64,000 nucleotides of DNA, from the IMG/VR virus record IMGVR_UViG_3300029983_000007, positions 248,001 to 312,000 of that record, one strand, 5' to 3'. Shown piece after piece: positions 3,130-60,295 of the stretch. A program made the translations under genes and the position numbers. The notes under the pieces were generated by a model. The model ran no database searches, had not been told where the DNA came from, and saw only the letters and a list, made by a program, of their open reading frames with translations. The first letter of the stretch is position 1; each line of letters starts with the position of its first letter.

Positions 3130-3786
3130 ATGAAATATATAAAGAGATTTGAAAGTAATGATTATATTGTTTATTCATTAAATGATATTGTAATTTGTTC
3201 TACAAAACATGACAGATTTCATGACTATACTGGTATAATAACTCAGAATGGTGAATTAGAATATGATAATGAAAAAGAAATTAAATATTGTAGAGAATAT
3301 AAAGTTATACAAATATATTGGAGTGGAAGAGGTTATAGAAATGTAACAACCAATTTATTATATAATGCATATGTAGATGTTCAAGATATTGAAACTGATG
3401 AAATAATAACTATGAAAGACGCAAATATGTTTACATTGAAATCTGAATGGAAAATTCCAGATGAACCAATGATAGGAGATTATGTATTATGTGAAATAAA
3501 TAGTAATAAATATAGTGATGATAATATTTTTGATGAATATATAAATAATAACATTGGAAGAGTTACTATGCAAAACGAGAAAAATGAATATGTAATTGAA
3601 TATAGAGATATACCTGAAAAAATGATAGGAGAAATAAATCAGTTTTATAATAATACAAATCCATTTATTAAAGATTTAGGTAAACATAAATTTAAAATTA
3701 AAGATATTGAAATGTATTCTAAAAACAAAAAAGAAGTTGAAGAATATTTAAATATTAAAAAATCAACAAAAAAATTCAATTTATAA
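3130..3786 (+). CDS. dual-tagged cassette protein with two SH3/KOW-like units
   Basis: MKYIKRFE; SLNDIVIC and MIGDYVLC motifs; TKKFNL. Confidence 0.85.
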   Translation: MKYIKRFESNDYIVYSLNDIVICSTKHDRFHDYTGIITQNGELEYDNEKEIKYCREYKVIQIYWSGRGYRNVTTNLLYNAYVDVQDIETDEIITMKDANMFTLKSEWKIPDEPMIGDYVLCEINSNKYSDDNIFDEYINNNIGRVTMQNEKNEYVIEYRDIPEKMIGEINQFYNNTNPFIKDLGKHKFKIKDIEMYSKNKKEVEEYLNIKKSTKKFNL

Positions 3787-6266: not shown

Positions 6267-6851
6267 TTATTTTTTGAACATATATTCTTCAACTATTTCA
6301 CAAATGATATGTCCAATCATAATATGAGATTCTTGTATTCTTGGAGTATCTTCTGATGGTACATTAATCATCAAATCACACATTCCTTTAAGCTTACCAC
6401 CATCTTTACCTGTGAATGCAATAGTTATCATTCCTAACTTATTGGCTTCATCACATGCATTTAAAATGTTATTTGAGTTACCTGATGTTGATATTCCTAT
6501 TAATATATCATTTTCTCTACCCATTCCTTTTATTAATCTTGAGTATATATCATCAAACGAATAGTCGTTTGCAACAGCAGTTAAATATGATGTATTTACA
6601 TGTAATGCTTCAGCAAATAATGGATCTCTATCTATATAAAATCTACCAGATAATTCTGCCGCTATATGTTGAGCATCAGCAGCACTACCACCATTACCAC
6701 ACAAAAGAACTTTACCTCCATTTTTAAAGCAAGCAATCAATAAATCAGAAACATCTTTAATTATGCTAATTAAAGTATCATCAGAATATATTAGTTCTTT
6801 GGCATTTATTGATTCTCTTATTATATCTTTAATTTTTTTCATTTTTTTCAT
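6267..6851 (-). CDS. gmhA: phosphoheptose isomerase (SIS domain)
   Basis: CGNGGSAADAQHIAAEL, TAVANDY, ISTSGNS and PRIQESHIMIGH motifs. Confidence 0.95.
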   Translation of the reverse strand: MKKMKKIKDIIRESINAKELIYSDDTLISIIKDVSDLLIACFKNGGKVLLCGNGGSAADAQHIAAELSGRFYIDRDPLFAEALHVNTSYLTAVANDYSFDDIYSRLIKGMGRENDILIGISTSGNSNNILNACDEANKLGMITIAFTGKDGGKLKGMCDLMINVPSEDTPRIQESHIMIGHIICEIVEEYMFKK

Positions 6852-32196: not shown

Positions 32197-32502
32197 ATGA
32201 AAGTAGAAAAATTTAATGAGCATAATTTTACAACATTTGATGATGATATTGTATATGCAGGTAAATCTAAATACCCAGTAGGCACCAAAATTAAATTTAA
32301 AGATGATGGTGAGTATTTAACTGGTACTTTGACACATCCATTTGGTTATGGTGATGTTGGTGTATTCTTAGATGAAAAAGGTAAATATAAATATGATAGG
32401 GTATCACTAAAAAACAATGAATATACAGTAATTGATGATGATGTTGATAAATTCATTAAAGATCACAATTTCAAAAAAGATATAAAAAAATTCAATTTAT
32501 AA
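32197..32502 (+). CDS. dual-tagged SH3-like protein
   Basis: MKVEKFNE; YPVGTKIKF; IKKFNL. Confidence 0.8.
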   Translation: MKVEKFNEHNFTTFDDDIVYAGKSKYPVGTKIKFKDDGEYLTGTLTHPFGYGDVGVFLDEKGKYKYDRVSLKNNEYTVIDDDVDKFIKDHNFKKDIKKFNL

Positions 32503-32548
32503 GTGAAATAGCTTATAACTTATGTTTATAAGTGAAATAGCTTATAAC
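32496..32548. repeat. two direct copies of a 24-bp palindromic unit
   Basis: TTTATAAGTGAAATAGCTTATAAC at 32496 and 32525; arms TTATAAG-N8-CTTATAA. Confidence 0.9.
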
Positions 32549-32549
32549 G

Positions 32550-32591
32550 AAAAAATCCTATCTAATTTTTCAATTAGATAGGATTTTTTTT
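32550..32591. terminator. bidirectional intrinsic terminator
   Basis: aaaaaatcctatctaatt-tttc-aattagataggatttttt. Confidence 0.85.
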
Positions 32592-32597
32592 AATATT

Positions 32598-32716
32598 GCT
32601 TGAGAATACAGCATTATAGAGAAGAACTTTAGAAACTATTATTTTTTTCTCACTAACATTTGAATTAGTATTCTTCTAATACAATCTAAGAAATAATTAA
32701 ACTTCTTTTGTTGTTA
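32598..32716 (-). repeat. degenerate duplicate of the 3' end of the GOLLD-like RNA
   Basis: Collinear with 32934-33070: tgagaa, ttata.agaagaa, tattatt.ttt, cactaa.att, attagta.ttct, cttttgttgtta. Confidence 0.6.
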
Positions 32717-32883
32717 GATAGTTCGGTAAAATGATAAAAAATAATTAAATTCATTAAATTTTAATTAATATTTTACTTTTTTTTCTTCATTCATAGAGGA
32801 TCTAATGGATTTACTCTCCTGAAGCGTTAATTTGGGTGAACTCAACCCTATTTTAATATTTTTTTATTAAAAATAAATAAATG

Positions 32884-32924
32884 AAAAAAAACACTACTTA
32901 ATATTGAATTAAGTAGTGTTTTTA
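32884..32924. terminator. intrinsic terminator downstream of the giant ncRNA
   Basis: aaaaacactacttaat-attga-attaagtagtgttttt. Confidence 0.85.
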
Positions 32925-32933
32925 TTTGTAATA

Positions 32934-33915
32934 GGCTGAGAAATATACCTTATACAGAAGAATCTTAAAAAGTTATTATTGTTTCTACTTTCTTTCCACT
33001 AATATTGGTTTCCCTAACATTAGTAATTCTCAATGACAGTCAATTAGATTAACTAATCCTTTTGTTGTTAATTACTCTCTCAGTACTTATTACCTATCTA
33101 GGTTGCCACCCAAACTCAATCTTGCTACAGATTTAAGGAATTTTTCTGAAAATCATGTCAAACTTGGGGTTCTTCACGGCTACGACGATTTTCATCTCAT
33201 AACTAGTAGTCACCTTTCATCAACAACAGTCGAACACTTTTCCTTTATTTGTTTTATTTTAATTGTGCATTAAATTTGCAATTTAAAGTTTGTTTTGTGG
33301 ATAATGAAAGTAGTGGTTCGACAACCAGCGTCTCCATCTTTTGAACGGAAATATACTAAACTACTCTCTGAGATATCCCTATCTCCATATTTTAAGTCAA
33401 CTAAGATACTCTCATAGCACTTGGTAATGCTAAGGTAACCTTAATAACAGCACCACCTGTACATTGTATTACAATCTAATATTACCTTTCGGTTTTAAGC
33501 TAACTCTCATAATGGACAACGCAATTATACAACTGGAAATCGTATTTCTTGCAATAATCCTTCAGGTTATTCTTATTGATGTTCCCATCTCACTTAGACT
33601 ACCCACATAGCCTTTGCATTAAACCACTTTCTCTACAGTGTTACCCTCGATAATTAAGGTTTAATGATATCCTGATTGTCTGCTCAAACACTAAATAATG
33701 TATTAATAACAAATTAACTAACTATTAACTATTCATATTAATGAGTATGTGAAGAATCTTACCGAAGCAAAATCAATTACACACAAAAAAATGTGTCAAA
33801 TTAATAATTGTTGTATCTGTTGATTAATAAATAATTTAATGTCGCAAATATATAGAAACAACTACATATTCACTTTATCCTACTTTCGTAGTTTATTTAA
33901 TGACTACAGACAGCC
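32934..33915 (-). ncRNA. GOLLD-like giant structured ncRNA (~980 nt)
   Basis: ORF-free, GC-enriched; 5' GGCTG pairs with 3' CAGCC; segments I recognise from GOLLD-type RNAs (GAGGGTAACACTGTAG, GGGAACATCAATAAGAATAAC, AAAACCGAAAGG, GTACAGGTGGTGCTG, GAGTAGTTTAGTA, TCAAAAGA, GAAAGGTGACTAC); terminator follows. Family call is from memory, not a covariance search. Confidence 0.78.
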
Positions 33916-34109
33916 AAATATTTTCAATTTTTACAAAGAACGCTTTTAATAAAAAACAAACATTTAGATTGTAGTAAAAATTTATACTATCACTTCTTAA
34001 CTAAAAGAAGTTAGTTCTAATAAAAGGAATTAACCTTTTAAACTTGTAAATTAACCATTTTCATAGTTATATATACTAATCAATCTAAATGTGTTGTTTC
34101 TTGTTGTTT

Positions 34110-34125
34110 CAAGTACGTTTACTTG
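34110..34125. repeat. CAAGTA-N4-TACTTG palindrome (also 34881, 35191, 36244; imperfect at 35779)
   Basis: Five copies seen in the island. Confidence 0.75.
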
Positions 34126-34251
34126 AAAAATGACACAAATCTATTTCAGTCCATTTTTTTCTTTTCAGAACTTTTTTCAGTGGAACAATAAACATTTGGT
34201 ATGTTCATTATATTTACTGTTATAATATAAATCCTTAAATTTGTATTACAT

Positions 34252-34320
34252 TTGCAACATTTACTTCTGTAATATTAATCGTACACTTTTGCAAGCTTCA
34301 AGTTGGCTTTTGCCTTTGAT
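34252..34320 (-). ncRNA. divergent copy of the 66-nt pseudoknot element
   Basis: Keeps TTGCA/TGCAA; ACTT/AAGT replaces CCTT/AAGG; GGC-AAAA-GCC hairpin. Confidence 0.5.
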
Positions 34321-34350
34321 TATTTTTATTACTTTTTCAATTTCATTAAT

Positions 34351-34416
34351 ATCTAAGTGTGTTTAGTTGCACTATCTCCTTTTGCAAGCTTCAAGGTGGT
34401 TTCTGTACCATTAGAT
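34351..34416 (-). ncRNA. 66-nt structured repeat element, copy 1
   Basis: Closing stem ATCTAA/TTAGAT, hairpin TGGT/ACCA, H-type pseudoknot CCTT/AAGG plus TTGCA/TGCAA. Confidence 0.7.
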
Positions 34417-34433
34417 TTTTCATTGCTTTTACT

Positions 34434-34499
34434 ATCTAAGTGTGTTTAATTGCACTATCTCCTTTTGCAAGCTTCAAGGTGGTTTCTATACCATTAGAT
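34434..34499 (-). ncRNA. 66-nt structured repeat element, copy 2
   Basis: Near-identical to copy 1. Confidence 0.7.
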
Positions 34500-34527
34500 T
34501 TTCAGTTTCATTTACAATTTAGTTTAT

Positions 34528-34596
34528 TTCTACATGTGTTCATTTATAGTTATACACCTATTGCAAGCTTCAAGGTGATTTCTGTATCAACATTTT
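34528..34596 (-). ncRNA. structured repeat element, divergent copy 3
   Basis: TGAT/ATCA compensates TGGT/ACCA; CACCT/AGGTG pairing. Confidence 0.55.
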
Positions 34597-34612
34597 TCAT
34601 TGTATTTGAAAT

Positions 34613-34678
34613 ATATAAGTGTGTTCATTTGCACTATCTCCTTTTGCAAGCTTCAAGGTGGTTTCTATACCATTATAT
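34613..34678 (-). ncRNA. 66-nt structured repeat element, copy 4
   Basis: Closing stem changed compensatorily to ATATAA/TTATAT. Confidence 0.7.
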
Positions 34679-34706
34679 TTCTCATTGTATAAGCAAGATA
34701 ATTAAT

Positions 34707-34773
34707 ATGTAAGTGTGTTCATTTGCACTATCTCCTTTTGCAAGCTTCAAGGTGGTATTTTATACCATTACAT
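34707..34773 (-). ncRNA. 67-nt structured repeat element, copy 5
   Basis: Closing stem changed compensatorily to ATGTAA/TTACAT. Confidence 0.7.
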
Positions 34774-34820
34774 TTTTCATTGCTTCAATCTGAAATTTGA
34801 TTTGTTTCATTATTGTAGTT

Positions 34821-34852
34821 CAAAATTACAAAAAGTTTTTTGTTTTACCAAA
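34821..34852 (-). promoter_or_regulatory. Bacteroidota sigma-A type promoter
   Basis: TTTG-N20-TAATTTTG; points into repeat copies 5 to 1. Confidence 0.8.
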
Positions 34853-35018
34853 TATTTAATGTTAAAGTTTTGAACTTTTTCAAGTACTCTTACTTGAATG
34901 AGTATTAAAAAACCAAGTCATTTATAAGTTCTGTTAGCTTCTCAGCTTAGAAAAATAAACTTTCATTTGTCATATTTATTCTTGTAACTTTACAAATCTG
35001 CGAAATGTATTATTATCA

Positions 35019-35085
35019 ATCTAAGTGTGTTCATTTGCACTATCTCCTTTTGCAAGCTTCAAGGTGGTATTTTATACCATTAGAT
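35019..35085 (-). ncRNA. 67-nt structured repeat element, copy 6
   Basis: About 40 nt downstream of promoter 35129-35160. Confidence 0.7.
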
Positions 35086-35128
35086 TATCTATTAAATCTG
35101 ATATATGTTTTGCTTTTTTATTGTAGTT

Positions 35129-35160
35129 CAAAATTACAAAAAGTTTTTTGTTTTACCAAA
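35129..35160 (-). promoter_or_regulatory. Bacteroidota sigma-A type promoter
   Basis: TTTG-N20-TAATTTTG. Confidence 0.8.
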
Positions 35161-35281
35161 TATTTAATGTTAAAGTTTGAACTATTTTTTCAAGTACTCC
35201 TACTTGTTTTTGTTATGAATAATAATCAAGGAACTTACTTCTTCTGACAAGTCAGTGTTTCAGTGTTAAAATTAATATTCA

Positions 35282-35371
35282 TAGTGAAGATAGATGGAGT
35301 TGAACCCAGTGTCAGTAACACTTGCCTTCTGCACAATTCGAATCGTGCTGCACCCTGTGTGCTTATCTTCA
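35282..35371 (-). tRNA. non-canonical tRNA-like element (class II-like; possible CGA/Ser anticodon)
   Basis: GAAGATA/TATCTTC acceptor, GCAC-ACAGG-GTGC D arm, GCACG..TTCGAAT..TGTGC arm, AGTGT/ACACT variable arm, GGTTCAACTCC T loop; T stem defective; ends ACTA rather than NCCA. Confidence 0.45.
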
Positions 35372-35714
35372 TCATTTTTATAATTTAATCAATAGTCAGT
35401 CCTTGTAGAGAAATAATAGCAGTCAGTCACTGATCATCTGACATTAGGTTCACACATCATCAAAAATTAATTTGATAGGTAATTTCCACGGTGTAGTTAC
35501 TATTTACATTTATAACAAGATAAGTTCTACAGTTCTCATATCTATTTCAATGGACTTTTCATCTTTGATAATTTTCATTATCATTAACTCACCACTATTA
35601 GCATCAAATTCATCTGGTTCATATATATTTTGTTACAAACATATACACTCTGATTTCAGATATTGCTGATATTTCTTGTTTAAATCTGATTTTTTGATTT
35701 AAATTATTGTAGTA

Positions 35715-35746
35715 CAAATATACAAAAAGTTTTTTGTTTTACCAAA
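35715..35746 (-). promoter_or_regulatory. Bacteroidota sigma-A type promoter
   Basis: TTTG-N20-TATATTTG. Confidence 0.75.
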
Positions 35747-35889
35747 TATTTTTTGATATTTTTTCTACATTTTTTACTCAAGTACGTTTACAAGAGTTTT
35801 AAAAAATCAAATCATTTTTCAGTTCTTTTTATCTTCACAGATTAGAAATAACATTTTTTCATTTGTTATATTTACTTCTGTAACATTAA

Positions 35890-35955
35890 ATTTATGTATT
35901 TTCAGTTTCACTATAATCTTGTTCAAGATTAAGGGTGGTTTCCTTACTACTAAAT
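35890..35955 (-). ncRNA. degenerate copy of the 66-nt element
   Basis: Alignable (ttca.tt.cactat, caag, gtggtttc..tac) but the pseudoknot stems are broken. Confidence 0.4.
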
Positions 35956-35968
35956 TGTGATTACTTTA

Positions 35969-36034
35969 ATCTAAGTGTGTTCATTTGCACTATCATTCTC
36001 TTGCAAGCTTTGAGAGGTTTTTATACCATTAGAT
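35969..36034 (-). ncRNA. 66-nt structured repeat element, copy 7
   Basis: Pseudoknot stem changed compensatorily to TCTC/GAGA. Confidence 0.68.
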
Positions 36035-36073
36035 TTTTTTCAATCTGAAATTTGATTTGTTTTTATTGTAGTT

Positions 36074-36105
36074 CAAAATTACAAAAAGTTTTTTGTTTTA
36101 CCAAA
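36074..36105 (-). promoter_or_regulatory. Bacteroidota sigma-A type promoter
   Basis: TTTG-N20-TAATTTTG. Confidence 0.8.
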
Positions 36106-36183
36106 TATTTAATGTTAAAGTTTTGAACTTTTTTTCAATTGAAATTTAATTTTTGTGATTATATTTCTTTTGATATTGTAGTG

Positions 36184-36215
36184 CAAAATTACAAAAAGTT
36201 TTTTGTTTTACCAAA
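36184..36215 (-). promoter_or_regulatory. Bacteroidota sigma-A type promoter
   Basis: TTTG-N20-TAATTTTG. Confidence 0.8.
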
Positions 36216-36284
36216 TATTTAATGTTAAAGTTTTGAACTTTTTCAAGTACTCTTACTTGAAGTTTTTTGTTTTTTATTGTAGTA

Positions 36285-36316
36285 CAAAATTAATAAAAGT
36301 TTTTGATACTACCAAA
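36285..36316 (-). promoter_or_regulatory. Bacteroidota sigma-A type promoter
   Basis: TTTG-N20-TAATTTTG. Confidence 0.75.
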
Positions 36317-36339
36317 TATTTAATGTTAAAGTTTCAGTT

Positions 36340-36678
36340 TTAATATACGCATTCATATCCATCTGAATTCTCAAGTGTTTCAATAATTTCCAATAAAAAA
36401 TCATTAAAGTTTTTACTTGTATAATCTTTTGAAAAGAAATAATGATATTTTTCTAAAATCTCATCTCCTCTATTATAAAACAATTTTAATTTTGTTGCAG
36501 TATCTAATGCATCATCTTTTGACATTTCATGAGCCATATCTGCATAGTGCTCATTTTGACAATATTCATTATCTTGAAATTTCGCACCAATTTCTCTACA
36601 TAAAGTTTCAATTAGATGTTCTCTATTTATGCTTGTTATAAACTTAATACCACTTTTTGTAATAATAGTTTTACTCAT
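36340..36678 (-). CDS. hypothetical protein
   Basis: 112 aa; directly under promoter 36704-36735. Confidence 0.75.
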   Translation of the reverse strand: MSKTIITKSGIKFITSINREHLIETLCREIGAKFQDNEYCQNEHYADMAHEMSKDDALDTATKLKLFYNRGDEILEKYHYFFSKDYTSKNFNDFLLEIIETLENSDGYECVY

Positions 36679-36703
36679 ATATTTATGTTTTTAAACTGAA
36701 TTA

Positions 36704-36735
36704 CAAAATTACAAAAAGATTTTCATACTACCAAA
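36704..36735 (-). promoter_or_regulatory. Bacteroidota sigma-A type promoter
   Basis: TTTG-N20-TAATTTTG. Confidence 0.75.
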
Positions 36736-36753
36736 CATTCACAAGTTAATTTT

Positions 36754-37098
36754 TCAATTATTTTTAAAATCTTCCAATGTTTTGTAATAACTACACATAT
36801 TTTCAATTGAATAGAAAACTAATATATTATTTTTTATTGCAAATTCAACTTCCTTATCTGCACCACTTGATTCTCCTGGTAATCTCAATATACAATCACA
36901 TACTGGAATCCACTCAAAATCAATTTTAAGCCAATCTTCATATGGTCTAGGATGAGCCATATGCTGAAAATGTGAATATAATGGTGTAAATGGCACAAAA
37001 CCTTTATTCATTAATTCATCTGCTGTGTCCATTTGTATTTTAACATTAACAGCAACATCACCTTTTGTATATGGTGAAGCTATATAAACTTTAATCAT
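36754..37098 (-). CDS. DUF4406/DUF1937-like (nucleoside deoxyribosyltransferase-fold) protein
   Basis: VYIASPY...PFTP...CDCILRLPGESSGADKEV. Confidence 0.8.
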   Translation of the reverse strand: MIKVYIASPYTKGDVAVNVKIQMDTADELMNKGFVPFTPLYSHFQHMAHPRPYEDWLKIDFEWIPVCDCILRLPGESSGADKEVEFAIKNNILVFYSIENMCSYYKTLEDFKNN

Positions 37099-37133
37099 AT
37101 TTTTATTTTATTTTTTAATATATATATGATATA

Positions 37134-37661
37134 ATGAAAAATATAAAAAGTTTTGATAAATACAATGAAGATGTACTAACTGATGGTTTTACTCCTGAGA
37201 ATGCAAGGTATAATGCAGGTATAAAAGCAAATAGAATAATATATCAACTTAAAAATTTATTATTACCTGTTGGTAAATTAACTGAGCAAGTTGTCACAAG
37301 GTCAATTGAATCAATAAATTCATTAAATAGAATTATTAATGATGAAATTATTGAAGATGATGCTATGATAACTCAATTAAAAAAATCAGATACTTCAAAT
37401 ACAATATTTGATGTTATAAAAAATATTGAAGTTAATCAAAATGGTATAAATAGATCTACAAATAAATACTCAGCTACAATAAATACTTTGTGGTTAGGAG
37501 GAAAAAAATATGATTTAATAGTAAAGCCATTATCATTTTGGTTGAATATGGCAAAAAAAGACAGAGAAACAGAAAATAAAATATCCAATCAACTATGTGG
37601 TTGGATAAATAGTAATATAAATTTAACTATTGAATCATTAAATAAAATAACACACAAATGA
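37134..37661 (+). CDS. hypothetical protein with leader MKNIKSFDKYNE
   Basis: Leader-like N-terminus, no KFN tail; follows TTTTTAATATATA motif. Confidence 0.8.
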   Translation: MKNIKSFDKYNEDVLTDGFTPENARYNAGIKANRIIYQLKNLLLPVGKLTEQVVTRSIESINSLNRIINDEIIEDDAMITQLKKSDTSNTIFDVIKNIEVNQNGINRSTNKYSATINTLWLGGKKYDLIVKPLSFWLNMAKKDRETENKISNQLCGWINSNINLTIESLNKITHK

Positions 37662-39297: not shown

Positions 39298-40941
39298 ATG
39301 TTAAAATATGATGATTATAATAAATTGAATGAGGCTTTCTTTCATCGTAGTAAAGATGAGTTAGAAAATCTCATACATTCATTTAAAAGCTTGATTATAA
39401 ATCTAAAACAATCAATAGATAAAAAATATACATTAGATTTCTATAAAACTCAAATCAAAGAGGATTTAGAATCATATAAAATAAATATATTGAATAATTA
39501 CAATAAAAATACAATTAGTAAATTTAAAGATTTGTTTAAAGAATTTTTAAATAATGTAGATAATGACATAATTAAGCATATGAAATTAGGTAAATTTGCT
39601 AATGATATATTAAAGATATATTCTATTAATAATTCTTTTGATATTAACATAAAGAATGTAAATAGTGTGTTTAAAGCTTATCTTGATAATGTTGATAGAT
39701 ATATAGACAACACATATGATTTTTTCTACAATAAGATTGAGACTGATAAATCATATGAACCATATAATAAAATTGATATTAAAATAAATAAAGTCCCTAT
39801 TGATGAATATCAAAAAACAAAATACAAATATCAAATTGAGTTATTAAAATTACAAGAATGGATTACATACAACAATAAAAAAGTATTGATTATATTTGAA
39901 GGTAGGGATGCTGCAGGAAAAGGTTCAGCGATTAGAAATATCACAAGATTTCTAGATCCAAAGCATTTTAGAGTACAGACATTTGGTATACCTACAGAAG
40001 AAGAGAGTAATAATTGGTTTGATAGATATGAAAAATCTTTACCTAAAAATGGAGAAATTGTTTTTTTTGATAGATCTTGGTATACAAGAGGTTATGTTGA
40101 ACCAGTGATGAAATATTCAACTGAAGATAAATATAATAAATTTATGAAAGAAGTCAATAACTTTGAAGATAAATTAATAGATGATGACATCATACTTATA
40201 AAAATATGGTTCTCCATATCTCAAGATGTACAAAAAATGAGATTTGAATTAAGAAAATCTAATCCATTGAAATACTGGAAGTTTAGTAAGAATGATGAGC
40301 AAACATTAGACAAATGGGATGAATTTACTAAATATATAAATGAGATTTTCAAAAAAACAAATACTAAAGATTCTCCTTGGATAATAATAGATGCTGATGA
40401 TGAAAATTATTCAAGATTAGAATCTTTCAATAGTATAATAAAATCAATAGAAAAAGATAAATCAAACATCAAAGAGGGTGGAATAAAAGTAATATTTGAA
40501 GATTTAGATGGACCATTAATTCCATATGATAAAAATTCAGATACCGACTATCATAAATTTTTTAATGATCCAGAAAAATGGAGTAAGACTGCTATGAGCA
40601 ATTTAAACAATATTATTGAAAAGACAGAAGCAAAAGTAGTATTATCTTCTTCATATAGAGATGATAAACCATTAAGCGAAATAGAAAAGATGATGAAAAC
40701 TGCTGGATTTAAATATAAAATATATGACGTTGTTCCAAATGACAAATCTAAAAAACGTGGATCTGATATAAAAGATTGGTTAAAGAATAATAAATCAGTT
40801 AGTAATTTTATTATTATTGACGATAATAAGCATGACTTATATGAAGTATTTAGCAAAAAACACATTGTTAAAACTACTCATGAATTAGGAATAACAGATG
40901 ATATTAAAGATGAAGCTATTGATAAATTAAATACTAAATGA
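39298..40941 (+). CDS. ppk2: polyphosphate kinase 2 fused to a C-terminal HAD-like domain, with N-terminal helical extension
   Basis: FEGRDAAGKG (Walker A), FDRSWY (Walker B), WKFS; then EDLDGPL, VVLSSSYR, RG..I..WL, FIIIDD. Confidence 0.9.
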   Translation: MLKYDDYNKLNEAFFHRSKDELENLIHSFKSLIINLKQSIDKKYTLDFYKTQIKEDLESYKINILNNYNKNTISKFKDLFKEFLNNVDNDIIKHMKLGKFANDILKIYSINNSFDINIKNVNSVFKAYLDNVDRYIDNTYDFFYNKIETDKSYEPYNKIDIKINKVPIDEYQKTKYKYQIELLKLQEWITYNNKKVLIIFEGRDAAGKGSAIRNITRFLDPKHFRVQTFGIPTEEESNNWFDRYEKSLPKNGEIVFFDRSWYTRGYVEPVMKYSTEDKYNKFMKEVNNFEDKLIDDDIILIKIWFSISQDVQKMRFELRKSNPLKYWKFSKNDEQTLDKWDEFTKYINEIFKKTNTKDSPWIIIDADDENYSRLESFNSIIKSIEKDKSNIKEGGIKVIFEDLDGPLIPYDKNSDTDYHKFFNDPEKWSKTAMSNLNNIIEKTEAKVVLSSSYRDDKPLSEIEKMMKTAGFKYKIYDVVPNDKSKKRGSDIKDWLKNNKSVSNFIIIDDNKHDLYEVFSKKHIVKTTHELGITDDIKDEAIDKLNTK

Positions 40942-48870: not shown

Positions 48871-49809
48871 TTAGAAAAAATTGGAAGCGTCAACATATTT
48901 GAATCCACATCTTTTAGCGAATGTTTTATCACTTGTCAAATCTCCAACCATTGTACATTGTGATGAGTCAAGTTTATATTTTTCAATAAAATCTACACCT
49001 AATCCTACACCTGGTTTTCTACAATAACAAATTATTGGAGGTACTGAATGTCCACAATATTTATAATCAATATTAACTCCTAACATTTCATTTGTTTTTT
49101 CAAAACAAGCTATTGCAGTTTCATGAGTTAATAAGCCTTTTGCTATACCGCTTTGATTTGAAACCCCTAGTAGTATATAACCTTGTTTCTGTAATTCTAA
49201 AAGTTTTTCTGTTCTACCAGGAATAATTTCTATATCATTCACATCAGTAGGGAAATGTCCTCCACTTTTAGTTACTCTTAAAGTACCGTCATAATCAAAT
49301 AAAATAGCTTTATTTGTATATTCTGATGGTTTACGTTTAAAATCAATTTTTTCTATATCATCAATTCCTTCTGATAGTTCTGGTGCTTCAAAATGTTTAT
49401 TAATTTTATAAAGTGCTGCAACAGGAAACATATGTGGATCATTAACTTTAGAATAATCACTTAAATTTGTAAACAACCTACCTTGAGTTTTTATCATTCT
49501 GGTAACAGCATTGAACATACAATCTTCAATTTTTGTTGTGAAATAAAGACACAATACATAGTAGCCATATTTTTTTGCTAATGCAATAGCATCAGCCCTA
49601 GATAACTTAGTAGAATATGTACCATCTAAGATAATATCTACTCCATCTATCATCAAGTTTTCAAGTTTTTTGTTGAGTGAACTTAATGTACCACCTTCAA
49701 TATCTCTTGAAAGTAATGTACACTTATAATCAACCCATTTTTCAACAATACTTGATTTTCCTGCTGCTGGTAATCCACAAGTTATAACTAATTTTTTATC
49801 TTTTATCAT
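48871..49809 (-). CDS. polynucleotide kinase-like P-loop domain fused to HAD-IIIA phosphatase (PNKP-like)
   Basis: CGLPAAGKSS, ILDGT; LFDYDGTL, VSNQSG, CRKP, MVGD..SD. Confidence 0.88.
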   Translation of the reverse strand: MIKDKKLVITCGLPAAGKSSIVEKWVDYKCTLLSRDIEGGTLSSLNKKLENLMIDGVDIILDGTYSTKLSRADAIALAKKYGYYVLCLYFTTKIEDCMFNAVTRMIKTQGRLFTNLSDYSKVNDPHMFPVAALYKINKHFEAPELSEGIDDIEKIDFKRKPSEYTNKAILFDYDGTLRVTKSGGHFPTDVNDIEIIPGRTEKLLELQKQGYILLGVSNQSGIAKGLLTHETAIACFEKTNEMLGVNIDYKYCGHSVPPIICYCRKPGVGLGVDFIEKYKLDSSQCTMVGDLTSDKTFAKRCGFKYVDASNFF

Positions 49810-57922: not shown

Positions 57923-58816
57923 ATGAAAGAATTAGAATTAAAAAAATTAGTACATTCAACTATAGACAACACTATCAAGTATATTTTTTATACTGAAGAT
58001 AAATTGATAGTTGAATTTTCTTATATCAATAAGAATGATGGTAAAAATATTATTTGCTGTCCAGTTTCAACATTTTGTAATATAGGCTGCAAATTTTGTC
58101 ACACAGCAGAATATATTGGTAAAATTAAAAATAGAAACCTAACATCATTAGAGATTTCAAATGGAGTTGATTATATTTATAATGATTTGAAACTATCTGA
58201 AAACCCAAAAACTTTATTGATAAGCTCCATGGGTATTGGTGAAATTGTAACCAATGTTGATGAAGTTGTAGAATCAATGATAAATATTCAAAATACTTAT
58301 CTTAAAGATATATATGTTAGATTTGCATTTGCAACATCTTTACCTGAATCTCACAAAATCGAGTTTTTCAAATTGACAAATAAAATTGCAGAGAATAATT
58401 TACCTGTTAAGTTGCATCTATCATTACATTATACAACAGATGAATTAAGAAGTCAATGGATGCCAATGTCAATGAAAATTGAACCAACTATTGCAGCAGT
58501 TGATTACTATAAAGCAACTACAGGAAATGATGTTGAAATACATTATGCACTAATAGAGAATGTTAATGATAAATCAGAAGATGCTATGAGATTAAGCAAT
58601 CTTATTAAAGGTAAAGGTTATAATGTTAAATTTTTATTCTATAACAAGAAAGATAATATAGACGCTGAACCATCTAACATTTCTAAAATTAGAAACTTTG
58701 TTGATATATTTAGTCTTGTAGGAATAAAACATGAATACTATGTACCTCCTGGACTCACAATTGGAGCATCTTGTGGTCAACTATCTATAAATGAGTATAT
58801 TAAAATAAAAAAATAA
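57923..58816 (+). CDS. RlmN/Cfr-family radical SAM RNA methyltransferase
   Basis: CxxxCxxC (CNIGCKFC) with upstream Cys 7 residues earlier, MGIGE, LHLSLH, C-terminal ASCGQL. Confidence 0.9.
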   Translation: MKELELKKLVHSTIDNTIKYIFYTEDKLIVEFSYINKNDGKNIICCPVSTFCNIGCKFCHTAEYIGKIKNRNLTSLEISNGVDYIYNDLKLSENPKTLLISSMGIGEIVTNVDEVVESMINIQNTYLKDIYVRFAFATSLPESHKIEFFKLTNKIAENNLPVKLHLSLHYTTDELRSQWMPMSMKIEPTIAAVDYYKATTGNDVEIHYALIENVNDKSEDAMRLSNLIKGKGYNVKFLFYNKKDNIDAEPSNISKIRNFVDIFSLVGIKHEYYVPPGLTIGASCGQLSINEYIKIKK

Positions 58817-58834
58817 TAATTAAATAATAATTAA

Positions 58835-60295
58835 ATGAATAATAGAAACTTCATATTACATATAAAAGAAGATAAATACAAAAAATTATTAATTGATTAT
58901 ATTTTTAAATATCGTCAATTCGAAAACTTATATCTTATAATATTAAAAGAGAATAAGGATGATTTTAATTTTTTATCTAATTATAAAGTAATGAGAGCTA
59001 TTCTTGCGGAAACTACTGGAGGTAAAGATAAAAATGAAGTTGATTTTATTAGATATAAATATAAAGAAAATGATAAAATGAATGAATTAATTATTTTATC
59101 AAAAAGTCTTAAAATACATAATATTTCAGATTTGATTAAAAGAGTAAAATCAAATTATAAATCTTTTTTCACTAAAATAAGAAATAAAGTTAAAGCCAAC
59201 GTTCCATGTACAAAAAAGTTATCACTATTGACTAAATATTCCATTCTAGTTGATAAAATTGCATTTTCAATAAAGAAAAAGGATAAAATTGGAATCAACT
59301 TGAGTAATAAAATGTTTTATATTGATTTTAAGCATAAAATATTACCAGATAATATACAAAGTCTTAAAGTCGTTTACTCAAATAAAGAAGTTTATTTACA
59401 TTTTAATTACTTGACTGAAGATATATTAAACACAAATAATTCATTAATAAAAGAAGCAGGAATAGATGTAGGTATTAATAATTTATTAGCTATATTTATT
59501 GATGATAAAACATCTAAATCAATAATTGTTGACGGAAATATTTTTAAAACTTATAATTCAAAATTCAACAGGTTCTTGTCTAAACTTAATGAATCAATTT
59601 CTAAAGAAGTCATAGAATTTAAACTCAGTAATACTGGTACTAAATATGCAGTTAAGTGGACTAAAAGAGGAATAGAATTACGTAAATATAAGACATTTAT
59701 TTATGAAAAAAGAAATCGTTATTTTTATGATCAATTTCATAAAGTTAGTAAACGTGTGGTTGAATTATTGAAATTAAATTCTGTAAACAATCTAACAATT
59801 TCATACAATCTAGCTAGATTAAAATATAATGGTGATTGTAAATTAAATAAAAAAGTAAAACAAAATTTCATACAAATTCCTTTCATAAAACTACTAAATT
59901 ACATTCAATATAAAAGTAATGAAGTTGGAATTCAAGTAGATATAATTGATGAATCTTACACATCAAAGTGCTCATGTATTAGTGATAATGTGAATGATCC
60001 GTTAGATAAAGAACTAAATGGTGTTCGTTCTAAAAGAGATTTATTTACTGATAAACTAATAAATAAAACAATGAATGCTGATTTGAACGGTGCTGTCAAT
60101 CATATAAAAAAATCAAACAAAAATAATAATTTTTCTTGGTTGGAAAATTATATGTTTAAACTGTGTAATCCAGTTAAAATTAAATGCGACTACGATTTCT
60201 TTAAATATTTAAAGAATAGTGTGCTCTGGCAAGGAATTTCATCAAAAGAAGTTCAAACGTCACTTCATGTACAAAATTGTACAAGTTTAAGTTGA
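58835..60295 (+). CDS. tnpB: TnpB-like RNA-guided endonuclease (IS200/IS605 family)
   Basis: RuvC motifs AGIDVGINNL, DESYTSK, NADLNGA; no tnpA nearby. Confidence 0.88.
   Translation: MNNRNFILHIKEDKYKKLLIDYIFKYRQFENLYLIILKENKDDFNFLSNYKVMRAILAETTGGKDKNEVDFIRYKYKENDKMNELIILSKSLKIHNISDLIKRVKSNYKSFFTKIRNKVKANVPCTKKLSLLTKYSILVDKIAFSIKKKDKIGINLSNKMFYIDFKHKILPDNIQSLKVVYSNKEVYLHFNYLTEDILNTNNSLIKEAGIDVGINNLLAIFIDDKTSKSIIVDGNIFKTYNSKFNRFLSKLNESISKEVIEFKLSNTGTKYAVKWTKRGIELRKYKTFIYEKRNRYFYDQFHKVSKRVVELLKLNSVNNLTISYNLARLKYNGDCKLNKKVKQNFIQIPFIKLLNYIQYKSNEVGIQVDIIDESYTSKCSCISDNVNDPLDKELNGVRSKRDLFTDKLINKTMNADLNGAVNHIKKSNKNNNFSWLENYMFKLCNPVKIKCDYDFFKYLKNSVLWQGISSKEVQTSLHVQNCTSLS

What the first reader, a model, noticed from the sequence alone, without database searches (positions are those of the whole stretch)
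34813..36735. Battery of near-identical Bacteroidota sigma-A promoters feeding a protein-free RNA island
Seen: seven minus-strand copies of TTTG-N20-TAnnTTTG (boxes at 34821, 35129, 35715, 36074, 36184, 36285, 36704), most embedded in a shared ~60-80 bp repeat (ttgtagttcaaaattacaaaaagttttttgttttaccaaatatttaatgttaaag on plus). Six have no credible ORF downstream; they point at the 66-nt elements, the tRNA-like element and the giant RNA. Established: TTTG(-33)/TAnnTTTG(-7) is the Bacteroidota housekeeping promoter consensus. Inference: the region is built for very high immediate-early RNA output and/or to capture host RNA polymerase, possibly in first-injected DNA. It also points to a Bacteroidota host.
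Basis: partly seen in the sequence, partly recalled or inferred. Interest (0 to 1): 0.72.

Follow-up and report, generated by a model that had tools for sequence, protein, structure and literature searches.

The report
Repeated host-type promoters feeding GOLLD RNA island
A giant peat-bog phage carries seven near-identical copies of a Bacteroidota-style promoter, each joined to a hairpin. All point the same way through a 3.8-kb gene-free stretch that encodes the known GOLLD RNA, arrays of a new 66-nt structured RNA and a tRNA-shaped RNA. The layout resembles the repeated promoter/stem-loop cassettes of T4-like phages, but no transcription data could be obtained.

Summary
All seven minus-strand TTTG-N20-TAnnTTTG sites are at the stated coordinates, inside an ~87-nt repeat. 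Nothing comparable exists elsewhere in the 330-kb record, which is a 46%-complete fragment of a peat megaphage.

The 'giant RNA' is GOLLD (Rfam, 243 bits). The 66-nt elements are a covarying four-helix RNA that is not in Rfam. The 'tRNA-like' element has an acceptor stem and a T-like loop but no anticodon loop.

The island recurs in two sister lineages with 10 and 6 promoter copies. A distant 634-kb megaphage has three promoters of the same class plus real tRNAs upstream of its GOLLD.

Box positions behave as measured Flavobacterium promoters do: TA and TTTG are fixed, and the two n positions vary but are never G. The genome lacks Shine-Dalgarno sites. Its relatives are Prevotella and Tenacibaculum phages. 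The extended motif occurs mainly in Bacteroidota genomes.

Best reading: these are PeSL-like hairpin-plus-strong-host-promoter cassettes, stacked with no canonical terminator before the GOLLD terminator, driving a processed non-coding RNA operon. The claims of immediate-early timing, RNA polymerase capture and first-injected DNA are untested; the read-laying run failed. I rate it a new variant of a known kind, of moderate interest.

The parts
36704..36735 (-). Promoter P7 (TTTG-N20-TAATTTTG). Predicted start site 36699. It is the only copy followed by an ORF (ATG at 36678).
36340..36678 (-). 112-aa ORFan between P7 and P6. It is absent from lineages B and C and has no Pfam or PHROG match.
36285..36316 (-). 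Promoter P6 (TAATTTTG). Predicted start site 36280. Only a hairpin follows before P5.
36184..36215 (-). Promoter P5 (TAATTTTG). Predicted start site 36179. About 100 nt of leader follow before P4.
36074..36105 (-). Promoter P4 (TAATTTTG). Predicted start site 36069. It leads into two 66-nt elements.
35715..35746 (-). Promoter P3 (TATATTTG). Predicted start site 35710. It leads into a ~340-nt RNA and then the tRNA-like element.
35129..35160 (-). Promoter P2 (TAATTTTG). Predicted start site 35124. It leads into one 66-nt element.
34821..34852 (-). Promoter P1 (TAATTTTG). Predicted start site 34816. It leads into five 66-nt elements plus one fragment, and then towards GOLLD.
34799..36768 (-). Span of the seven 87-nt repeat units: A/T-rich upstream block GTTCAAAACTTTAACATTAAATA, -33 element, spacer with A5-C-T5, -7 element and ACTACAAT. 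Units lie at 34799-34885, 35107-35193, 35693-35779, 36052-36138, 36162-36248, 36263-36349 and 36682-36768.
36241..36261 (-). Hairpin TTCAAGTAAGAGTACTTGAA, 62-82 nt upstream of the P5 start site. Sister copies lie at 34878-34898 (before P1), 35191-35206 (before P2), 35777-35796 (before P3, degenerate) and 34107-34127 (after the last array). A T-run lies 5' and an A-run 3', so there is no U-tail.
   Evidence: (D6)
35969..36035 (-). 66-nt structured element, cassette A copy 1. Copy 2 lies at 35890-35956.
35019..35085 (-). 66-nt structured element, cassette B.
34284..34773 (-). Array of five 66-nt elements (34707-34773, 34613-34679, 34530-34596, 34434-34500, 34351-34417) plus a fragment (34284-34310).
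35371..35710 (-). ~340-nt non-coding unit downstream of P3. A 12-13-bp inverted repeat pairs its predicted 5' end with the sequence just before the tRNA-like element. Conserved blocks occur in all three lineages, and no ORF is conserved.
35285..35370 (-). tRNA-shaped element: 7-bp acceptor-like stem (one G-U pair in lineage B), a D-like arm, a 7-bp stem with tetraloop where the anticodon arm would be (replaced by an unrelated hairpin in lineage B), a variable-arm-like hairpin and a GGTTCAAyTCC T-like loop. Neither ARAGORN nor the Rfam tRNA model calls it.
33968..34008 (-). Decayed promoter-cassette copy (TAAATTTT followed by tACTACAAT, with no TTTG at -33) upstream of GOLLD. It is more decayed or deleted in lineage B.
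   Evidence: (D15)
32933..33368 (-). GOLLD RNA, the conserved 3' domain covered by the Rfam model. The variable 5' domain extends upstream, with three-lineage conserved blocks up to about 33945.
32887..32923 (-). First canonical intrinsic terminator of the block (16-bp stem plus T-run), directly after GOLLD.
32554..32699 (-). Duplicated GOLLD 3'-end fragment (32598-32699, 30.8 bits) with a second terminator (32554-32585). It lies downstream of a ~160-nt insert found only in the window's own lineage (lineage W).

Best explanation
The seven sites are working promoters for the host's primary sigma factor, of the Bacteroidota -33 TTTG / -7 TAnnTTTG type. Each is part of a ~90-100-nt composite cassette. 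The cassette holds a palindromic hairpin, an A/T-rich upstream block, an extended -33 (ATATTTGGTA), a 20-nt spacer with an A5-C-T5 inverted repeat, the -7 box, and a conserved start region ACTACAAT. The predicted start is the A five nt after the box G.

The cassettes are stacked in one orientation along a minus-strand block that runs from the uppermost promoter (36735) down to the GOLLD terminator (32887). The first canonical terminator comes only after GOLLD. Polymerases starting at any of the seven promoters can therefore run on, and flux adds up toward the 3' end, where the longest 66-nt array and GOLLD lie.

The long precursor would then be cut into units. Candidates for the cuts are the closing stems of the 66-nt elements, the inter-unit hairpins, and the tRNA-shaped element acting as an RNase P/Z-type cleavage signal.

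In evolutionary terms the cassettes behave like the PeSL cassettes of T4-type phages. Recombination between near-identical copies would expand, contract and reshuffle the units, while selection or gene conversion keeps the promoter core intact.

Shown: the sequence features, the conservation pattern, the co-orientation, the absence of intervening canonical terminators, the copy-number differences and the Bacteroidota signals. Inferred: actual initiation, read-through, processing and timing.
For: 1. Exact consensus and spacing in 7 of 7 copies.
2. Across 21 copies from three lineages, TA and TTT are invariant and the final G is kept in 18 of 21. The two n positions take AT, TA, AC, AA or CT and are never G. 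This is the TAHHTTTG rule measured in F. johnsoniae, which places G at -5 (PMC6847099; box at -12 to -5 in PMC9723704).
3. In the aligned section between P6 and the hairpin before P2, promoter cores are 88% identical across three lineages, against 68% for the rest of that section.
4. All copies are co-oriented with GOLLD in every lineage.
5. The same class (TTTGGTA...AAAA...TAnnTTTG) sits upstream of small ORFs in this genome, about 20-40 nt from the start codon. The extended motif lies 4-45 nt upstream of ORFs in most of ~12 unrelated viral contigs. Genome-wide, TAnnTTTG peaks 30-39 nt before start codons.
6. LR745206.1, a 634-kb megaphage of the clade predicted to infect Bacteroidetes (PMC7162821), has three tandem promoters of this class interleaved with two tRNAs upstream of its GOLLD.
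7. Host signals: no Shine-Dalgarno use, Lak and Tenacibaculum phage relatives, and 7 of 9 named bacterial hits in Bacteroidota.
8. No sigma-70 region 2 or RNA polymerase beta was found in the fragment.
9. Only two canonical terminators exist in the block, both at or after GOLLD.
10. PeSL-like behaviour: 7, 10 and 6 copies in lineages W, B and C. The 112-aa ORFan is present only in W, between P7 and P6, where lineage C has one promoter whose downstream flank matches P6 and whose upstream flank leans toward P7.
Against: - There is no transcript or 5'-end evidence. The single read-laying run was lost to a filter. The three metatranscriptome runs hold only 5-7% of the island's words, and it is not known which part.
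- The spacer and flanks are conserved far more than a promoter alone needs. Recent duplication, gene conversion or an extra bound factor could explain much of the identity.
- The hairpin has no U-tail on either strand, so its role is unknown and 'no termination between units' is an assumption.
- The record is only 46% complete, so a phage sigma factor or polymerase may be encoded elsewhere.
- The strand of the 66-nt elements is not independently fixed: there are 6 G-U cells against 6 A-C cells. The P3 unit folds equally well on both strands.
- Only three closely related lineages carry the 66-nt element.
Confidence: 0.65

Rival explanations
1. The promoters are real, but their number has no adaptive meaning. 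A unit of promoter, small RNA and hairpin was tandemly duplicated recently. The 'empty' copies (P5, P6) are leftovers of deletions, and the near-identity reflects youth or gene conversion rather than selection for high output.
For: - Copies within one genome share the same nn variant, for example AC in adjacent B copies and AA in three B copies, which suggests concerted evolution.
- The copy number differs freely between lineages at 7, 10 and 6.
- The spacer and flanks are as conserved as the boxes.
- A decayed copy exists at 33968-34008.
Against: - Promoter cores stay about 88% three-way identical while the surrounding island has diverged to 68%.
- Variation is confined to the positions the polymerase tolerates (PMC6847099).
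- A distant megaphage independently shows three tandem promoters before GOLLD.
Confidence: 0.15
2. The main function is to titrate the host's sigma-A RNA polymerase (a polymerase sink or decoy). The RNA products are secondary.
For: - Two promoters in W, and up to five or six tandem promoters in lineage B, are spaced 97-158 nt apart with nothing but a leader between them.
- The sites are very close to consensus.
Against: - Seven to ten sites per genome copy is a small sink.
- The downstream RNAs are conserved and structured.
- The phage's own genes appear to use the same promoter class, so starving that polymerase would harm the phage.
- There is no direct evidence either way.
Confidence: 0.07
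3. The sites are read by a phage-encoded sigma factor or a modified polymerase as middle or late promoters. The extra conserved parts (GGTA after TTTG, A5-C-T5 in the spacer, ACTACAAT at the start) would be the true specificity elements.
For: - Conservation extends well beyond the canonical boxes.
- GOLLD expression was reported to rise late, during lysis, in a Lactobacillus prophage (bioRxiv 10.1101/2024.12.08.627333).
- More than half of the genome is missing.
Against: - No sigma-70 region 2 or RNA polymerase beta homologue was found in 330 kb.
- The same extended motif occurs in bacterial Bacteroidota genomes, including ones with 53-56% GC, where it cannot be a phage-specific signal.
Confidence: 0.08
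4. The repeats act at the DNA level and the promoter resemblance is incidental or auxiliary. Possibilities are iterons or a transcription-activated replication origin, a packaging or partition site, or operators for a phage regulator that binds the palindromes.
For: - This is the largest non-coding stretch in the record.
- It is A/T-rich and carries two palindromes per unit: TTCAAGTA...TACTTGAA and ACAAAAA-AC-TTTTTGT.
Against: - All copies share one orientation, co-directional with GOLLD.
- The variation pattern follows the polymerase-contact rule.
- The elements between the repeats show RNA-type compensatory changes.
- There is no GC-skew turning point at the island.
Confidence: 0.05

Closest known systems
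PeSL (promoter-early stem-loop) cassettes of T4-type phages (Arbiol et al. 2010, PMC2839356; Comeau et al. 2014, PMC4122927)
   Same: - Both are repeated small composite motifs made of a near-consensus host primary-sigma promoter, an A/T-rich upstream block and a stem-loop. In PeSLs the stem-loop can lie upstream of the promoter or between its two boxes, and both placements occur here.
- Both are concentrated in a plastic region.
- In both, indels between close relatives are bounded by the repeats. Here this applies to the ORFan between P7 and P6 and to the copy numbers 7, 10 and 6.
   Different: - The sigma specificity differs: Bacteroidota -33/-7 instead of E. coli -35/-10.
- Six of the seven cassettes drive non-coding RNAs, not ORFans.
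- Copies are clustered in one island, whereas PeSLs number about 50 and are dispersed.
- The upstream hairpin lacks the G/C tract and U-tail, so terminator activity is doubtful.
- The phage is a Lak-related megaphage, not a T4-type phage.
- Mini-circle formation was not examined.
GOLLD RNA loci next to tRNA islands in phages and prophages (Rfam RF02032; bioRxiv 10.1101/2024.12.08.627333 and references there)
   Same: GOLLD scores 243 bits here. It lies on the same strand as, and directly downstream of, an array of small structured RNAs, in a phage. The distant relative LR745206.1 has the classical version with true tRNAs.
   Different: True tRNAs are replaced by a 66-nt four-helix RNA that no tRNA model recognises, and by one anticodon-less tRNA-shaped element. 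The multi-promoter architecture upstream of GOLLD was not mentioned in the papers I read.
Tandem strong early promoters A1, A2 and A3 of phage T7, and tandem P1-P2 promoters of bacterial rRNA operons (from general knowledge, not tested here)
   Same: Both have several strong host-polymerase promoters in series and in one orientation, whose flux adds up on the downstream genes. The rRNA operons also give stable-RNA products that are released by processing.
   Different: T7's cluster sits at the first-entering genome end and drives mRNAs. Neither position nor timing can be judged here. The rRNA operons have two promoters and are not repeats of one cassette.
Bacteroidota sigma-A (sigma-AB) promoters (TTTG / TAnnTTTG; PMC6847099, PMC9723704, PMC12632263)
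   Same: The -7 box, the -33 box, the 20-nt spacing, the absence of G at the two n positions, and an A/T-rich upstream region all match.
   Different: These copies add an unusually fixed GGTA after TTTG, an A5-C-T5 spacer and a conserved start region. Function was not measured.

Membership tests
Bacteroidota primary-sigma (sigma-A / sigma-AB) promoter | -7 element TAnnTTTG with T-12, A-11, T-8, T-7, T-6 and G-5 nearly invariant, and no G at the two n positions | tested here: met
   All 7 of 7 window copies match. Across 21 copies in three lineages, TA and TTT are invariant, G is kept in 18 of 21 (A in 3 lineage-B copies), and nn is AT, TA, AC, AA or CT, never G. The rule comes from PMC6847099.
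Bacteroidota primary-sigma (sigma-A / sigma-AB) promoter | -33 element TTTG about 19-21 nt upstream of the -7 element | tested here: met
   TTTG with exactly 20 nt of spacer in all seven copies.
Bacteroidota primary-sigma (sigma-A / sigma-AB) promoter | Transcription starts about 5 nt downstream of the box G | not testable with these tools
   Read laying was lost to a filter. RNA runs hold only 5-7% of the island's words. Predicted starts: 34816, 35124, 35710, 36069, 36179, 36280 and 36699.
Bacteroidota primary-sigma (sigma-A / sigma-AB) promoter | The organism that reads it is a member of Bacteroidota | tested here: inconclusive
   All indirect signals agree. Only 6 of 422 ORFs have a Shine-Dalgarno-like motif. 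The best phage relatives are Prevotella Lak and Tenacibaculum phages. The extended motif is found in 10 bacterial contigs, and 7 of the 9 named are Bacteroidota. No CRISPR-spacer or cultured-host evidence exists.
PeSL regulatory cassette (T4-type phages) | Composite repeat: strong host primary-sigma promoter, A/T-rich upstream block and a stem-loop | tested here: met
   The unit holds the hairpin TTCAAGTAnnnGTACTTGAA, the block GTTCAAAACTTTAACATTAAATA and the promoter. There is also an inverted repeat ACAAAAA-AC-TTTTTGT between the boxes.
PeSL regulatory cassette (T4-type phages) | Indels and replacements between close relatives are bounded by the repeats | tested here: met
   Copy numbers are 7, 10 and 6. 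The numbers of 66-nt elements differ. ORF112 is present only in W, between P7 and P6, with a hybrid-looking single promoter in lineage C. The hybrid junction is suggestive, not proven.
PeSL regulatory cassette (T4-type phages) | The stem-loop works as a terminator or attenuator | not testable with these tools
   The sequence argues against a canonical terminator: a T-run lies 5' and an A-run 3', with no U-tail. Only the two sites at 32887-32923 and 32554-32585 pass a terminator scan.
PeSL regulatory cassette (T4-type phages) | Dozens of dispersed copies, mostly just upstream of ORFans in hyperplastic regions of a T4-type genome | tested here: not met
   The seven strong copies are clustered in one island, and six of them precede non-coding RNA. 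Only about three weak relatives lie elsewhere. The phage is related to Lak megaphages. It therefore works like PeSLs but is not filed as a PeSL.
GOLLD RNA (Rfam RF02032) | Covariance-model score above the curated gathering threshold (150 bits) | tested here: met
   243.3 bits over model positions 1-416 at 32933-33368 on the minus strand. The sister lineages score 275-279 bits.
tRNA | Recognised by ARAGORN or the Rfam tRNA model; 7-nt anticodon loop | tested here: not met
   ARAGORN finds no tRNA in the window. There is no RF00005 match at E <= 10 in 32300-37200. The arm at the anticodon position is a 7-bp stem with a tetraloop and is replaced by another hairpin in lineage B. The 66-nt elements lack D-loop and T-loop signatures.

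The most novel reading that the evidence does not exclude
The 66-nt four-helix RNAs, together with the tRNA-shaped element, would be the functional stand-ins for the tRNAs that normally accompany GOLLD. They would be made from the same terminator-free, multi-promoter precursor so that their amount is set relative to GOLLD. They would then act as cargo or partners of the GOLLD RNA cage, or as decoys for host RNA-targeting defences, which might link them to the nearby RNA-repair genes. The promoter stack would then be a dosage device for an RNA-only phage machine.
Probability: 0.12. Interest if true: 0.8.

Novelty: new variant of a known kind. Interest (0 to 1): 0.5.

Why it matters
GOLLD is one of the largest bacterial and phage RNAs. 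It is now known to form a 14-mer cage, yet its function is still unknown. This locus shows GOLLD as the last member of a conserved, terminator-free, multi-promoter non-coding operon, in which the usual tRNA neighbours are replaced by a new small structured RNA. That gives concrete partners and a concrete expression model to test.

The finding also extends the 'promoter plus stem-loop cassette' mode of phage genome plasticity from T4-type coliphages to Bacteroidota megaphages, and from ORFans to RNA genes.

It supplies sequence-level host evidence for an uncultured peat megaphage. It also defines a compact extended promoter (ATATTTGGTA-N5-AAAAACTTTTT-N-TAnnTTTG-nACTACAAT) that may be a useful strong part for Bacteroidota genetics.

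Tried and rejected
The call still counted, so no 5'-end or coverage data exist.
- Rfam at E <= 10 over the island gave nothing for the 66-nt elements, the tRNA-like element, the P3 unit or the hairpins. ARAGORN found no tRNA.
- Strand of the 66-nt element from wobble pairs: 6 G-U cells against 6 A-C cells, so no decision. The P3 unit has z-scores of -1.7 (minus strand) and -2.7 (plus strand), so no decision.
- More lineages: a metagenome scan with a degenerate 66-nt pattern returned only the same three populations.
- Base-pairing between the 66-nt element and GOLLD, or with itself through the AAGCUU loop, was not better than shuffles. There was one 7-mer match, which is at chance level.
- The 66-nt element as a small gene: it carries AAGGAG plus AUG, but both are lost in copies with compensatory changes, so I rejected this.
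- A phage sigma factor, RNA polymerase beta and a T9SS sorting domain as a host marker were each sought and none was found. The record is half a genome, so this is weak.
- tblastn of the 456-aa ORF against phages found no match.
- The Lak-B1 locus around the 66-nt DNA match has no GOLLD and no promoter array.
- A literature search on U-tail-less terminators in Bacteroidota gave nothing usable.
- The idea that the extended motif marks host stable-RNA promoters has only one clear case, between the 16S rRNA and a spacer tRNA in a MAG contig. I left it open.


Full report
**Observation.** A pattern search finds TTTG-N17-21-TAnnTTTG on the minus strand at 34821, 35129, 35715, 36074, 36184, 36285 and 36704, exactly as reported. 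The window holds 17 matches against 5.8 +/- 2.4 expected, and no shuffle reached 17. The seven sites sit in an 87-nt direct repeat. A profile built from them finds only these seven strong copies in the whole record, plus three weak relatives near a tRNA array at 60-61 kb.

**Where the window comes from.** The window is bases 248001-312000 of a single 330,208-bp contig with 24% G+C. IMG/VR holds it as a linear virus record with 46% estimated completeness. It is therefore about half of a megaphage genome. The DNA runs that hold the region are peat metagenomes. The island (genome 280503-284339) is the longest stretch without an ORF in the record.

**What the promoters point at.**
- *GOLLD.* The 'giant RNA' is GOLLD (RF02032) at 32933-33368 on the minus strand, 243 bits against a 150-bit threshold. 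A 16-bp-stem terminator follows at 32887-32923.
- *66-nt elements.* There are eight copies plus a fragment. An alignment of 18 copies from three lineages gives a closing stem and three hairpins. Five pairs show changes on both sides; column 9/74 alone has CG, AU, GC and UA. The covariation score beats all 500 shuffles and all slid controls. Rfam has nothing like them at E <= 10. They contain AAGGAG and an AUG, but both are lost in copies with compensatory changes, so they are not small genes.
- *tRNA-like element.* The element at 35285-35370 has a 7-bp acceptor-like stem, with a G-U pair in lineage B that favours the minus strand. It also has a D-like arm, a variable-arm-like hairpin and a GGTTCAAyTCC loop. 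The arm in the anticodon position is a 7-bp stem with a tetraloop, and lineage B has an unrelated hairpin there. ARAGORN and the tRNA model reject it.
- *P3 unit.* Between P3 and the tRNA-like element lies a ~340-nt unit with blocks conserved in all lineages and no conserved ORF. A 12-13-bp inverted repeat pairs its predicted 5' end with its 3' end.

**Cassette anatomy.** Read on the minus strand, each unit holds:
- the hairpin TTCAAGTAnnnGTACTTGAA, with a T-run before it and an A-run after it;
- the block GTTCAAAACTTTAACATTAAATA;
- TTTG, extended to ATATTTGGTA;
- a 20-nt spacer holding ACAAAAA-AC-TTTTTGT;
- TAnnTTTG;
- nACTACAAT.

In Flavobacterium the box occupies -12 to -5 (PMC9723704, PMC6847099). 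The predicted start is therefore the A of ACTACAAT, at 34816, 35124, 35710, 36069, 36179, 36280 and 36699.

Three promoters head cassettes of the form promoter, leader, 66-nt elements, a ~150-nt tail and a hairpin: P4 with two elements, P2 with one, and P1 with five plus a fragment. P3 heads the 340-nt unit and the tRNA-shaped element. P6 and P5 are followed by only about 100 nt. P7 precedes a 112-aa ORFan. A decayed copy lies at 33968-34008, before GOLLD.

A scan that accepts A/U-rich stems finds canonical terminators only at 32887-32923 and 32554-32585. By sequence, nothing canonical stops polymerases between the uppermost promoter (36735) and the end of GOLLD.

**Comparative evidence.**
- Exact-pattern scans of IMG/VR found the same island in two sister lineages. 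Lineage B (for example L006) has 10 promoter copies and lineage C (L030) has 6. All are co-oriented with a GOLLD scoring 275-279 bits.
- The islands are collinear and 80-85% identical overall.
- In a three-way alignment of the section from P6 to the hairpin before P2, promoter cores are 88% identical against 68% for the rest of that section.
- Across 21 copies, TA and TTT never change. The final G is A in three lineage-B copies. The two n positions take AT, TA, AC, AA or CT and never G. This is the TAHHTTTG rule derived from mapped F. johnsoniae promoters (PMC6847099).
- The 634-kb phage LR745206.1 shares only about 75% identity over part of GOLLD. It belongs to the set of largest genomes that were predicted to infect Bacteroidetes (PMC7162821). 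It carries three tandem promoters of the same class (TTTGGTr...AAAAAG...TAnnTTTG) interleaved with two tRNAs directly upstream of its GOLLD, on the same strand.

A promoter stack in front of GOLLD and its small RNAs is thus not peculiar to one genome. In the window's clade, the 66-nt and tRNA-shaped RNAs stand where tRNAs stand elsewhere.

**Is it the host's promoter type, and is the host a Bacteroidota?**
- Only 6 of 422 ORFs have a Shine-Dalgarno-like motif, which is below background. TAnnTTTG peaks 30-39 nt upstream of start codons on the sense strand. Both are hallmarks of the phylum (PMC6847099, PMC9723704).
- The same promoter class precedes small ORFs elsewhere in the genome.
- The 22-base extended motif is expected about once or less by chance in IMG/VR (my estimate from base composition). 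It occurs in about 12 unrelated viral contigs, in most of them 4-45 nt upstream of an ORF.
- It also occurs in 10 bacterial contigs. Of the 9 whose titles name a taxon, 7 are Bacteroidota: Bacteroides, two Prevotellaceae, Alistipes, Muribaculaceae, Flavobacteriaceae and Chryseobacterium. Some of these genomes have 53-56% G+C.
- A 403-aa protein of the window has its best matches in Prevotella Lak megaphages and Tenacibaculum phages, which account for 20 of 26 records.
- No sigma-70 region 2 or polymerase beta subunit is encoded in the fragment.

The host inference is well supported but indirect.

**Evolutionary behaviour.**
- Copy numbers of promoters and of 66-nt elements differ between lineages.
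- The 112-aa ORFan lies between P7 and P6 in the window's lineage only. Lineage C has one promoter there, whose downstream flank matches P6 and whose upstream flank leans toward P7.
- This is the behaviour described for PeSL cassettes of T4-type phages. Those are repeated strong sigma-70 promoters with an A/T-rich upstream block and a stem-loop, which may lie upstream or between the boxes, and they mediate modular shuffling (PMC2839356, PMC4122927).
- The resemblance is functional. The sigma type, the RNA cargo, the clustering and the phage lineage all differ, and the hairpin here lacks a U-tail.

**What remains untested.**
- No transcript data could be obtained.
- Timing is unknown. Published work on GOLLD reports a rise during lysis, not early (bioRxiv 10.1101/2024.12.08.627333).
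- Position relative to the genome ends cannot be judged on a half genome.
- Polymerase capture is possible but unsupported.
- The strand of the 66-nt elements rests on context only: promoter and GOLLD orientation, one G-U pair in the tRNA-shaped element, and the A/T skew.
- I found no base-pairing signal between the 66-nt RNA and GOLLD.

**Verdict.** The feature is real and non-random. It is best read as a stack of PeSL-like host-promoter cassettes driving a processed non-coding RNA operon that ends in GOLLD, in a megaphage of a Bacteroidota host. The promoter type, GOLLD and the cassette principle are all known. New here are their combination, the terminator-free stacking, the recurrence in a distant megaphage, and the 66-nt RNA family.

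Noticed in passing
window 32554-32882: A ~160-nt insert (about 32717-32876) is present only in the window's lineage. It carries a 66-nt stretch 82% identical to Prevotella Lak-B megaphages. It is followed by a duplicate of the GOLLD 3' end (32598-32699) with its own terminator (32554-32585). This looks like an insertion with target duplication at the end of GOLLD.
   Followed up: partly
window 39298-40941 (+) and 48871-49809 (-): RNA-repair-type genes lie close to the RNA island. One is a fusion of polyphosphate kinase 2 (PPK2) with the HAD domain of 'Swiss Army Knife' RNA-repair proteins. The other is a T4 Pnk-like kinase-phosphatase (AAA_33 plus PNK3P).
   Followed up: no
window 57923-60295 (+): A TnpB/Cas12f-like ORF (OrfB_IS605 plus Cas12f1-like TNB domain, 486 aa) lies directly after a weak radical-SAM match (297 aa, score below Pfam's cut-off).
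   Followed up: no
L048 (genome 55500-62000), e.g. 3221-3289 and 3308-3376 (-): The phage's tRNA array contains several unusually long tRNAs (81-89 nt). It also has two identical 69-nt tandem elements that the Rfam tRNA model accepts (42.6 bits) but ARAGORN does not call. Promoter-plus-short-hairpin units of the same class lie just upstream, near small ORFs.
   Followed up: partly
L049 (LR745206.1) 6747-6834 (-): In the distant 634-kb megaphage, one of the two tRNAs between the tandem promoters and GOLLD is an 88-nt oddity. ARAGORN reports it with an undetermined identity and a two-base anticodon.
   Followed up: no
L038 5863-5894 (+), a 'Clostridia' MAG contig: The extended promoter motif sits between a 16S rRNA gene and a spacer tRNA, 34 nt upstream of the tRNA. 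This hints that the extended form may mark stable-RNA promoters, or that this rRNA contig is mis-binned.
   Followed up: partly
66-nt elements, e.g. window 35019-35085: Every standard copy carries a HindIII-type palindrome AAGCTT in its largest loop and an AAGGAG that half-pairs in a stem. This is striking in a genome that otherwise avoids Shine-Dalgarno motifs. Both features change in copies with compensatory substitutions.
   Followed up: partly
whole record (genome.fa): TAG ends only 11 of 422 crude ORFs (TAA 294, TGA 117). Four tRNA-Gln genes are clustered at 217.5-217.8 kb. Lak relatives are known for stop-codon reassignment, which I did not examine here.
   Followed up: no
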